Assembly (NCBI RefSeq): GCF_963506605.1 | Contig: NC_083276.1 | Span: 18,600,001-18,664,000, forward strand | DNA length: 64,000 nucleotides | Source of the DNA: Zootoca vivipara | Lineage: Eukaryota | Direction of reading: 5' to 3' | Part shown: one piece after another, positions 25,528-26,459 of the stretch | Numbering within the stretch: the first letter of the stretch is position 1 | How the letters are laid out: every line of letters begins with the position of its first letter | Program-made: the position numbers and the translations under genes | Notes under the pieces: generated by a model | Databases searched by the model: none | Told to the model about the DNA's origin: nothing | Seen by the model: the letters and a program-made list of their open reading frames with translations, nothing else

Positions 25528-26111
25528 GACCTGCACCGGTGCGCATTTGGTTGGCTGGCCATTCTATCGTTTATTGGGCCGGCATAAGGGCCGGTGAAAC
25601 TGACTTCGGGCGTCAACTTGGTCTCCCCCAACATGTGCAGGTCTCCTGGATGGGTCAGCGAGGAATGCGTTGGGGGGAACTTCTCCCTTTGCTGCAGGAT
25701 AAGGTTCTCAGGGAGGGTCCACCCCACGCGTTAGTTATTCAATTGGGGGAAAATGATCTTCACGAGTGGGATTGTCTGTCCCTACGGTTGGCCATTAAAA
25801 AGGATTTGGTGGTTTTGAAGAATTGGATGCCTAAGGTGCACCTTTTCTGGTCACAATTGCTACAACGCAGAGCCTGGCGTGGCAGCACTGACACAGCTAG
25901 TCATGCCACTTTTGAACGCACAAGGAAGCGCATCAACAGTGCAGTTTCAAAACAGATTGTTGAGCTGGGGGGGTCGATAATCGGGCACCCGGGGATTAAA
26001 TCTTGCTCCACCTCCCTTTATCGTGATGATGGGGTCCATCTGTCTCCCACAGGGAATGATTTGTGGCTGGGGGCGGTGGCTTGGGGTTTAAAAAGTTGGT
26101 TAGGATTCTGA
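25528..26111 (+). CDS. SGNH/GDSL-type hydrolase (esterase) ORF of the retroelement, probably reached by splicing
   Basis: Blocks GHS (I), G-GMRW (II), LGEND (III) and DGVH (V). Preceded by CTGAC branch point, pyrimidine tract and CAG acceptor ending at 25527. The open frame extends upstream to 25476. Confidence 0.85.
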
Positions 26112-26459
26112 GTGTTGGCGGGAGCCTGCGGCTTCTGTGGCGGGTTAGGCTTTGGTTGATGAGTTTGGGAGGGGCATGGCATGGAGGTGCATGCCCCTCA
26201 GTGCTGCTCTATAGAAGTATTCCGTTAAAGGAATCCTGGGGCTCCGGGGCTCTAGTCCTTACACCCCCGCAATGGGGCGGGGCTGGGGCCGGTACAGAGC
26301 ACGAGCCTTGGGGAGCATTTCTGGTGGGGGAGATTGCCTGGTCGCAGCTATCTCCTCTACCAAGGTAATGTTTACTTGACTTTCCTATTGTAGGAAGTCA
26401 GAGCTGGTCCTGTCCCATCGTGGGGCAGAAGATTAACCAAAGCCTAAGGCCAACACTCA
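26109..26459 (+). ncRNA. Predicted highly structured cis RNA domain in the element 3' UTR
   Basis: Closing stems 26109-26119/26449-26459 (11 bp, perfect) and 26145-26160/26432-26447 (16 bp, one G-U) enclose at least five hairpins. The non-Watson-Crick pairs are G-U on the + strand. Confidence 0.7.

What the first reader, a model, noticed from the sequence alone, without database searches (positions are those of the whole stretch)
26109..26459. ~350-nt multi-hairpin RNA domain closed by long-range stems at the 3' end of the YR retroelement; candidate RT-priming, packaging or catalytic RNA
Seen: the domain starts exactly at the SGNH stop codon (TGA 26109). TGAGTGTTGGC (26109-26119) pairs perfectly with GCCAACACTCA (26449-26459). 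TTAGGCTTTGGTTGAT (26145-26160) pairs with ATTAACCAAAGCCTAA (26432-26447). The 3' strands are separated by one base, while the 5' strands are separated by a 25-nt insert with a small hairpin (GGAGCC-TGC-GGCTTC). Enclosed stems: GAGGGGCATG/CATGCCCCTC (26169-26199); ATTCC/GGAAT (26219-26234); GGCTCTAGTCC/GGGCTGGGGCC (26248-26290, 3 G-U); TGGTGGGGGAGAT/ATCTCCTCTACCA (26322-26362, 2 G-U); TGACTT-CCTA/TAGG-AAGTCA (26377-26400); CTGTCCCA/TGGGGCAG (26410-26428). The mismatches are G-U on the + strand, which suggests selection on sense RNA rather than on DNA. Established: these elements have no tRNA primer-binding site and their priming is poorly understood, whereas retrons (a1/a2 closing stem) and hepadnaviruses (epsilon) use cis RNA folds to start reverse transcription. 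Inference: this may be an undescribed RNA module of a Gag-RT + recombinase + SGNH + structured-RNA system.
Basis: partly seen in the sequence, partly recalled or inferred. Interest (0 to 1): 0.88.

Follow-up and report, generated by a model that had tools for sequence, protein, structure and literature searches.

The report
Hairpin-rich terminal repeat of lizard Ngaro retrotransposon
The 350-base multi-hairpin fold is real, but it is the already known "B" terminal repeat of a Ngaro-type jumping gene, present in the lizard genome far more often than the element's genes; that such repeats fold into a stem-closed hairpin bundle may be new, and its function is untested.

Summary
Observation confirmed. 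All the stems exist at the stated coordinates. The 351-nt stretch folds far better than dinucleotide shuffles (z -7.4 sense, -7.0 antisense), while neighbouring element sequence does not (z about 0 and +1).

The interpretation needs correcting. The stretch is most likely the B1 copy of the Ngaro split direct repeat (A1-ORFs-B1-A2-B2), the element's LTR-like non-coding end with its AATAAA. This copy seems to have no A2-B2. Evidence:
- In public DNA contigs of the same species, 26110-26553 has 300-4500 times the summed depth of the single-copy flank. The coding part has only 3-22 times.
- The shared unit runs from about 26138 to the element's last base, about 26579.
- A decayed stand-alone relative lies at 15025-15445 (minus strand).
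- A distant metagenome relative (L031) has B1 starting 41 nt after its SGNH stop.

The G-U strand argument fails, because base composition explains it. There is no Rfam match and no tRNA head.

One result supports a function. In a distant SGNH-Ngaro lineage, four B subfamilies, partly unrelated inside, all form a stem-closed, well-folding domain. One of them carries a compensatory change in that stem.

Other readers of this scan noted hairpin arrays in Ngaro B repeats elsewhere in this genome (s1-852033, s1-852696).

The parts
19718..26580 (+). Ngaro-type tyrosine-recombinase retrotransposon, a single-B copy with no A2-B2
   Evidence: RVT_1 in ORF 21326-24601. Phage-integrase SAM-like and catalytic domains in 24526-24912 and 24938-25495. 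SGNH ORF 25476-26111. A 7-bp AGATTAA sits on both sides, at 19711-19717 and 26581-26587. No direct repeat links the 5' and 3' regions.
25476..26111 (+). SGNH-type esterase ORF; its stop TGA is at 26109-26111
   Evidence: 44 homologues in lacertids, other squamates and newts, some carrying PF13472. Invariant GHS, GENDL and DGVHLS blocks; the C-terminus ...SWLGF* matches the ...SWLGL* of the homologues.
26109..26137 (+). Last 29 nt of the internal region, before B. Holds the 5' arm of the outer stem (26109-26119) and most of a small hairpin.
   Evidence: Sequence and fold. Depth here is still that of Ngaro copies: about 2284 at 26105-26106 against 49 in the flank. Contigs coming from SGNH stop at 26167, one 31-mer into the shared repeat.
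26138..26579 (+). B repeat (B1 copy) of the split direct repeat: a high-copy unit made of the hairpin bundle plus an A-rich tail
   Evidence: Summed contig depth 15,500-221,000 over 26110-26553, against about 49 in the flank. Organism C has a loose end at 26138. A single-copy contig joins the flank from 26580. The stand-alone relative ends at the same CTTGGnnCGCAA motif. z -4.88.
26145..26160 (+). 5' arm of the 16-bp stem that closes the bundle inside B
   Evidence: Pairs with 26432-26447, one G-U.
26161..26431 (+). Array of about eight enclosed hairpins
   Evidence: MFE helices listed. z -5.17 (+) and -4.81 (-).
26432..26459 (+). Contiguous 3' arms of both closing stems (26432-26447 and 26449-26459)
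26482..26487 (+). AATAAA polyadenylation-type signal inside B, followed by a GT-rich stretch at about 26530-26555
   Evidence: Sequence only. The RNA reads laid showed no poly(A) end.
15025..15445 (-). Decayed stand-alone relative of the B unit (a solo repeat or short derivative of a sister family)
   Evidence: Its tail aligns 26437-26578 to 15162-15025 at 63% identity, E 0.017. Loose-end consensi of the high-copy family match 15136-15159 and 15420-15437. No Ngaro coding sequence lies beside it. It does not fold better than shuffles, z -0.30.

Best explanation
The stretch is the B1 copy of the split direct repeat (A1-ORFs-B1-A2-B2) of a Ngaro-type tyrosine-recombinase retrotransposon, plus the 29 nt that precede it. 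B is the element's LTR-like non-coding end. It starts about 30 nt after the stop of the last (SGNH) ORF, carries the AATAAA signal and runs to the element's last base. This copy has one B and no A2-B2. Either recombination between B1 and B2 removed them, or the assembly collapsed the two B copies.

B is far more abundant in the genome than the genes. It occurs twice per intact element and also survives in solo A-B remnants or short derivatives of this and sister families.

Inferred, not shown: the fold itself is functional. A hairpin bundle closed by a long-range stem sits at the 3' end of the sense genomic RNA, and as its mirror image on the first-strand cDNA. I think it most likely acts in cis as the handle by which the element's Gag/RT picks its template and starts or transfers cDNA synthesis. 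It would also keep each B copy a compact unit during the repeat-annealing steps of the published replication model.
For: Identity as B:
- The element has RT, YR and a terminal SGNH ORF. This is the architecture of amphibian Ngaro elements, where B1 follows the SGNH ORF (PMC9210276).
- Summed depth over 26110-26553 is 300-4500 times the flank, while the coding part is about 3-22 times.
- The shared unit starts at about 26138 and ends at 26579, the element's end.
- Relative L031 has B1 at +41 to +668 after its SGNH stop and B2 at +1744 to +2371, 99.5% identical.
- Solo AB repeats are documented for Ngaro (PMC8547959). A short non-autonomous derivative, SIRE, is documented for the YR element VIPER (PMC6681497).
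- Unchecked scan notes report 7.9-8.1-kb copies with A/B repeats in this genome.

Functional fold:
- z -7.4 for the domain, against about 0 for neighbouring element sequence.
- In a distant lineage, four B subfamilies of 350-730 nt, partly unrelated inside, all begin GCGGAAA and end TTTCCGC. Every MFE closes them with that stem. They fold with z -3.9 to -7.0 on the sense strand, always better than the antisense strand.
- L025 carries a compensatory A-U to C-G change in that stem.
- The DIRS-1 RT acts in trans, its primer is unknown and a 3' hairpin has been proposed as primer (PMC7192593).
- Stranded RNA reads of family members lie almost entirely in one orientation over B.
Against: - No second B and no A2 are present in this copy, so the direct-repeat property that defines B is not shown here.
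- A1 could not be identified.
- I obtained no base-level covariation for the lizard fold. The only readable diverged relative (15025-15445) keeps about 47% of the homologous pairs, near chance, and has z -0.30.
- RNAalifold on the distant lineage gave a positive (unfavourable) covariation term and many broken long-range pairs.
- In the lizard both strands fold equally well, and composition explains the G-U bias. RNA, cDNA or plain DNA palindromes cannot be told apart.
- The tool warns that summed contig depth is not a copy number.
- Other places in the element also fold well locally.
- The RNA reads that were laid come from diverged relatives, not from this copy.
Confidence: 0.6

Rival explanations
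1. The structure works on DNA rather than on RNA. Either the minus-strand single-stranded cDNA folds, for second-strand priming or for joining its ends, or the inverted repeats are binding sites that shape the recombinase's attachment site at the B|A circle junction.
For: - The antisense strand folds as well as the sense strand, z -6.99 as RNA and -6.07 as DNA.
- DIRS-1 amplifies through linear single-stranded cDNA (PMC7192593).
- B's last bases joined to the element's first bases (...ATCGCAAAC|TGAGGGTTGCGAA...) make an imperfect palindrome like a YR core site.
- In the distant lineage the terminal motif is conserved as sequence in three of four subfamilies.
Against: - In the distant lineage the sense strand folds better in all four subfamilies.
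- One compensatory change there favours pairing over a protein-binding site.
- Eight internal hairpins are not what recombinase arm sites look like.
Confidence: 0.15
2. The fold has no function. B is needed only as terminal redundancy and as a poly(A) signal. The hairpins are by-products, for example inverted duplications from RT template switching, still intact because this copy is young.
For: - The decayed relative has lost the fold completely.
- No covariation was shown in close copies.
- Other hairpins of similar local strength lie inside the RT ORF.
- The insertion looks recent: another individual probably has an empty site.
Against: Unrelated B sequences in a distant lineage have the same stem-closed, well-folding design. 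This is hard to get five times by accident. The A2 region of L031 folds less well, z -2.5 and -1.6.
Confidence: 0.2
3. The domain is an independent short repeat (a SINE or MITE) that landed behind the SGNH stop, and the closing stems are its terminal inverted repeats.
For: Very high copy number relative to the genes. A stand-alone relative without Ngaro genes. An 11-bp perfect TG...CA inverted repeat at 26109 and 26459.
Against: - Contigs from tens of Ngaro copies, including one with 61 differences over about 365 nt (about 83% identical), continue from SGNH into the domain.
- TGA at 26109 is the native stop, at the same C-terminal position as in the homologues.
- The high-copy unit runs from about 26138 to 26579, so the inverted repeats are not at its ends.
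- There is no target-site duplication around 26109 and 26459.
- There is no tRNA-like head.
Confidence: 0.05

Closest known systems
B repeat of the split direct repeats (A1-ORFs-B1-A2-B2) of Ngaro, PAT and VIPER-type YR retrotransposons (Goodwin and Poulter 2004, as summarised in PMC9210276 and PMC6681497)
   Same: Its position directly after the last ORF (SGNH), its reach to the element's 3' end, its non-coding nature and its excess over the internal part.
   Different: This copy shows only one B and no A2. The papers I could search do not describe a dense stem-closed hairpin fold of B.
Solo AB repeats of Cafeteria Ngaro elements (PMC8547959) and solo LTRs
   Same: Terminal-repeat units scattered through the genome without the genes. 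This explains the excess depth over B and the stand-alone relative at 15025-15445.
   Different: I could not read the lizard's stand-alone units, so whether they are A-B solos is inferred, partly from an unchecked scan note (s1-852083).
SIRE, the short non-autonomous derivative of VIPER in Trypanosoma cruzi (PMC6681497)
   Same: A high-copy short element sharing the 3' end of a YR retroelement. It would imply that the 3' end is what the machinery recognises in trans.
   Different: There is no evidence here that the abundant units carry the Ngaro 5' end or were mobilised in trans.
3' UTR stem-loops of stringent-type LINEs and their SINE partners (discussed in PMC5135761), and the 3' hairpin proposed to prime DIRS-1 (PMC7192593)
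   Same: A structured element at the 3' end of the template RNA, shared between autonomous and abundant short units, and a candidate RT entry point.
   Different: Those are single stem-loops with experimental support in some cases. This is a 300-nt bundle in a YR element, and binding and priming are untested.
Retron a1/a2 stems and hepadnavirus epsilon
   Same: Cis RNA folds that start reverse transcription.
   Different: No sequence or structure match in Rfam. Nothing suggests a branched 2'-5' product or protein priming.

Membership tests
Ngaro-type YR retrotransposon | Reverse transcriptase plus tyrosine recombinase in one element | tested here: met
   RVT_1 (E 1.7e-10), Phage_int_SAM_4 and SAM_1, and Phage_integrase. 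The YR is split over two frames in this copy.
Ngaro-type YR retrotransposon | Extra SGNH hydrolase ORF after the YR (the vertebrate and amphibian type) | tested here: met
   44 homologues, several with PF13472. The catalytic blocks GHS, GENDL and DGVHLS are invariant. PMC9210276 describes the same layout.
Ngaro-type YR retrotransposon | Split direct repeats A1 ... B1 A2 B2 | tested here: not met
   No direct repeat within 17000-30000 or between the 5' and 3' regions. This copy has a single B. Some Xenopus families and several relatives (L008, L023, L025) also lack a second B (PMC9210276).
B repeat of the split direct repeat | Begins shortly after the last ORF and ends at the element's 3' terminus | tested here: met
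   The shared unit starts at about 26138, 29 nt after the stop, and ends at 26579 next to single-copy flank. L031 has B1 at +41.
B repeat of the split direct repeat | A second, near-identical direct copy (B2) after A2 in the same element | tested here: not met
   Absent from this copy. Scan notes report it for other copies of the genome, but I could not read those.
B repeat of the split direct repeat | More copies than the internal region (two per element plus solo units) | tested here: met
   Summed depth 15,500-221,000 against 170-1070 for coding sequence and 49 for the flank; many distinct contigs. Depth is only a rough guide.
tRNA-derived SINE | tRNA-like head with A and B boxes | tested here: not met
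   ARAGORN finds nothing in 14500-27500. No tRNA or SINE family in Rfam.
MITE or solo LTR inserted at the stop codon | Inverted repeats at the very ends of the repeated unit, flanked by a target-site duplication | tested here: not met
   The unit's ends are about 26138 and 26579, not 26109 and 26459. The flanks GATTC and AAAAA differ.
Known catalytic or RT-priming RNAs in Rfam (hammerhead, HDV-like, twister, HBV epsilon, retron msr) | Match to the family's covariance model | tested here: not met
   Only three chance-level hits at E 0.35-0.86, none of these families.
Structured cis-acting RNA under selection | Compensatory base changes across independent copies | tested here: inconclusive
   Lizard: the only diverged relative is decayed. 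The top read variants are mostly pair-preserving, but there are too few of them. Distant lineage: one compensatory change in the closing stem, and no overall covariation signal.

The most novel reading that the evidence does not exclude
The B repeat of SGNH-type Ngaro elements is a conserved structural module: a hairpin bundle closed by pairing of its two ends, kept across animal lineages even though its sequence is completely replaced. It would be the long-sought cis signal through which YR retroelements select, package or prime their template. It would also explain why B-bearing short units outnumber the autonomous elements.
Probability: 0.25. Interest if true: 0.75.

Novelty: new member of a known kind. 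Interest (0 to 1): 0.42.

Why it matters
How tyrosine-recombinase retrotransposons (DIRS, Ngaro, PAT, VIPER) start reverse transcription and choose their template is unknown. The one experimental system, DIRS-1, shows that the RT works in trans and that no primer has been found (PMC7192593).

If the B repeat is a folded recognition platform, it gives a concrete, mutable target for that question. It would also draw a parallel to the shared 3' structures of LINE-SINE pairs.

If it is not, the finding is an ordinary terminal repeat of a known element family in a lizard. It is then useful mainly for repeat annotation, because the unit occurs hundreds to thousands of times.

Tried and rejected
2. 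Exact-pattern scans for two conserved cores of the unit found nothing in genome contigs or viral contigs. The viral contigs protein scan was also blank.
3. I searched the domain's longest open frame as a protein, hoping for gene calls on other copies. It gave only one low-complexity 4783-aa hit.
4. The search of earlier findings by sequence was blank.
5. G-U strand asymmetry as evidence for selection on sense RNA: rejected, composition explains it.
6. SINE, MITE or solo-LTR insertion at the stop codon: rejected (see rivals).
7. Similarity between the element's 5' region and the 3' unit, to find A1/A2: none above shuffles.
8. A hairpin enclosing AATAAA (26447-26495) as a poly(A) switch: not better than shuffles, z -0.32.
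9. Pair conservation in the 15-kb relative: about 47% of pairs, near chance. The surplus of double changes disappears once the control is corrected for the reference always being paired.
10. RNA evidence for this copy: the reads laid were 98% partial matches from diverged relatives. None covered the coding part, apart from partial matches to a short motif at about 25592-25739. Expression of this copy is not shown.
11. The read laying and the look-up of sequencing runs caps (one call each) were used on 25000-27200, so the copy number of the element's 5' end is unknown.

Full report
**1. The observation**

TGA at 26109 ends the last ORF, 25476-26111.
- 26109-26119 pairs perfectly with 26449-26459.
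- 26145-26160 pairs with 26432-26447, with one G-U.
- The two 3' arms are one base apart. The 5' arms are split by 25 nt.

RNAfold returns exactly this architecture, with about eight enclosed hairpins.

| Stretch | z-score |
|---|---|
| 26109-26459, sense | -7.39 |
| 26109-26459, antisense | -6.99 |
| Interior 26161-26431, sense / antisense | -5.17 / -4.81 |
| 26109-26459, antisense as ssDNA | -6.07 |
| Last 359 nt of the SGNH ORF | 0.01 |
| Element's 5' end | +1.09 |

With 200-nt windows the domain is not unique: 23600-23799 scores -5.6 and 21700-21899 scores -4.9.

**2. The element**

- ORF 21326-24601 has RVT_1.
- 24526-24912 and 24938-25495 carry the integrase SAM-like and catalytic domains, in two frames.
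- The last ORF is an SGNH esterase with invariant GHS, GENDL and DGVHLS blocks. Its homologues are in lacertids (50-60% identity), other squamates and newts, and they end at the same residue.

This is the Ngaro layout with a terminal SGNH ORF described for amphibians, where the ORFs are followed by B1, A2 and B2 (PMC9210276).

A 7-bp AGATTAA lies on both sides of 19718-26580. No direct repeat links the two ends.

**3. The key new result: copy number**

I laid contigs and reads of four public runs on 25000-27200. Summed contig depth in DNA run X3 of the same species was:

| Region | Summed depth |
|---|---|
| Flank 26628-27200 | about 49 |
| Coding part | 170-1070 |
| Position 26105-26106 | about 2284 |
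| 26110-26553 | 15,500-221,000 |
| 26554-26627 | 1,500 |

The high depth over 26110-26553 is carried by many distinct contigs. The tool warns that this is no copy number, but the contrast is two to three orders of magnitude.

The edges of the shared unit:
- Contigs coming from SGNH all stop at 26167, one 31-mer after 26137. One of them has 3 differences and another has 61, which makes it a diverged copy.
- A low-coverage run of another organism (X15) tiles 26158-26538 at 93-100% identity but has nothing on the genes. One of its contigs departs from the window upstream of 26138.
- A single-copy contig joins the right flank from 26580 and carries 313 nt of unlike unique sequence. This is probably an empty-site allele.

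So the abundant unit is about 26138-26579. It is attached to SGNH in tens of copies and occurs far more often without it.

**4. A second copy in the window**

Loose-end consensi of the abundant family led me to 15025-15445 on the minus strand.
- Its tail aligns with 26437-26578 at 63% identity.
- It ends at the same CTTGGnnCGCAA motif.
- Its upstream sequence matches what precedes the unit in organism C.
- No Ngaro coding sequence lies beside it.
- It does not fold (z -0.30) and keeps about 47% of the homologous pairs, close to chance.

It is an old, decayed, stand-alone relative.

**5. What the unit is**

Notes from other readers of this scan (unchecked) report 7.9-8.1-kb Ngaro copies with A/B repeats in this genome. 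They also report a hairpin array in the B repeat (s1-852033) and a solo A-spacer-B unit (s1-852083). I tested this lead as far as I could.
- Among 31 distant SGNH relatives fetched from metagenome contigs, L031 has a 629-nt direct repeat at +41 to +668 and at +1744 to +2371 after the SGNH stop, 99.5% identical. That is B1-A2-B2 with B1 starting just after the stop.
- Three other loci with long downstream sequence (L008, L023, L025) have no second B, like my copy.
- Solo AB repeats are published for Cafeteria Ngaros (PMC8547959). A short high-copy derivative, SIRE, is published for VIPER (PMC6681497).

Position, extent and abundance therefore fit the B repeat. The defining second copy is missing here, either by B1 x B2 recombination or by assembly collapse.

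**6. Is the fold more than an accident?**

Negative results:
- Base composition explains the G-U bias. Observed G-U pairs are 19 (sense) and 4 (antisense), against 22.5 and 6.7 in shuffles. The strand energy gap is -37, against -33 +/- 6 kcal/mol in shuffles.
- No Rfam family matches. There is no tRNA head and no tandem repeat.
- The few high-frequency family variants I could see mostly keep pairs. G-U becomes A-U at 26158 and 26315, C-G becomes U-G at 26204, and one variant breaks a 4-bp stem. They are too few to count.

Positive result, from a distant lineage (one metagenome source, host unknown):
- Four B subfamilies (L010, L014, L025, L031), 350-730 nt long and partly unrelated inside, all begin ...GCGGAAA and end TTTCCGC.... 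Every MFE closes them with that stem.
- L025 has A-U replaced by C-G at stem position 8.
- All four fold better on the sense strand than on the antisense strand:

| Subfamily | z sense / antisense |
|---|---|
| L010 | -6.96 / -3.02 |
| L014 | -4.45 / -3.07 |
| L025 | -3.91 / -3.46 |
| L031 | -4.44 / -1.93 |

- The A2 region of L031 folds less well, -2.5 and -1.6.
- Against this, RNAalifold on L031, L014 and L029 gave no net covariation.

The design, B as a stem-closed hairpin bundle, thus recurs with unrelated sequence in two very distant lineages. I take this as moderate support for a function.

**7. Mechanism (inferred)**

B holds AATAAA at 26482, so genomic RNA should end inside B2. That places the bundle at the RNA's 3' end, where RT-recognition structures of other retroelements lie.

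The published model for these elements needs annealing between repeat portions (PMC6681497). The DIRS-1 RT acts in trans, its primer is unknown, and a 3' hairpin has been suggested as primer (PMC7192593).

My best reading is a cis-acting template handle on sense RNA. A role on the single-stranded cDNA, or at the B|A recombination junction, is the main rival. No function at all remains quite possible.

The outer 11-bp stem uses 26109-26119, which lies outside B. It can therefore form only in the B1 context. I have no test of what that means.

**8. RNA**

Stranded RNA reads (X16) over B lie almost only with the first mate on the minus strand. 98% of them are partial matches from diverged relatives. 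None cover the genes, apart from partial matches to a short motif at about 25592-25739. B-family RNA exists; expression of this copy is not shown.

**9. Limits**

- Copies elsewhere in this genome could not be read.

**Verdict**

The fold is real and strong. It is the Ngaro B terminal repeat, not a new module. The structured-B architecture is a plausible and, as far as I could find, undescribed property. It deserves a proper covariation test.

Noticed in passing
window 19711-19717 and 26581-26587; element ends at 19718 and 26580: A 7-bp AGATTAA flanks the element on both sides. Joining the element's last and first bases (...ATCGCAAAC|TGAGGGTTGCGAA...) gives an imperfect palindrome with a ~5-nt spacer, like a tyrosine-recombinase core site. 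This agrees with scan note s1-851712.
   Followed up: partly
window 26580-27117 (X3 contig, record 21): A single-copy contig from another individual matches the right flank from 26580 and carries 313 nt of unlike unique sequence on the other side. This is probably an empty-site allele, so the insertion would be polymorphic and young.
   Followed up: no
window 15025-15445, minus strand: A decayed stand-alone relative of the B unit with no Ngaro genes beside it. Its upstream 30 nt match what precedes the unit in the high-copy family of organism C.
   Followed up: yes
window 23619-23784 and 21700-21899: Strong local hairpins inside the Gag/RT ORF. One is a 22-nt inverted repeat, 82% complementary, at 23619-23640 and 23763-23784. 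The 200-nt windows score z -5.6 and -4.9.
   Followed up: no
window 24526-24912 and 24938-25495: The tyrosine recombinase is split over two reading frames in this copy, so this copy is probably not autonomous.
   Followed up: no
window 25592-25739: A short motif inside the SGNH ORF has raised contig depth (~1000). 24 RNA reads match only this piece and then run on into unlike sequence.
   Followed up: no
window 19266-19365 and 37166-37266: A 100-nt repeat, 81% identical, lies just upstream of the element and again 18 kb away. It is probably an unrelated interspersed repeat.
   Followed up: no
L009-L011, L013, L014, L016, L023, L025, L027, L029, L031 (40-120 nt after the SGNH stop): A conserved box of ~50 nt with TGTGGCGGAAAAAAT marks the start of B in all subfamilies of one metagenome lineage. 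Its inverse TTTCCGCT marks the end of B. L025 shows a compensatory A-U to C-G change.
   Followed up: yes
L018: -282 to -156 and +1261 to +1387 relative to the SGNH stop: A 127-nt, 100% identical direct repeat has its first copy inside the SGNH coding region. In that family B1 seems to begin before the stop codon.
   Followed up: no
L001, L015, L018, L020, L021, L025 (downstream of the SGNH stop): Short tandem repeats of 31-113 nt lie within the 3' non-coding region. In L025 each 31-nt unit forms a CACCG/CGGUG hairpin.
   Followed up: partly
window 26109-26259 (X14, organism B): A 151-nt contig at depth 2.9 matches perfectly and starts exactly at 26109, while the run otherwise lacks the family. 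This could be cross-sample carry-over or a restriction-site library.
   Followed up: no
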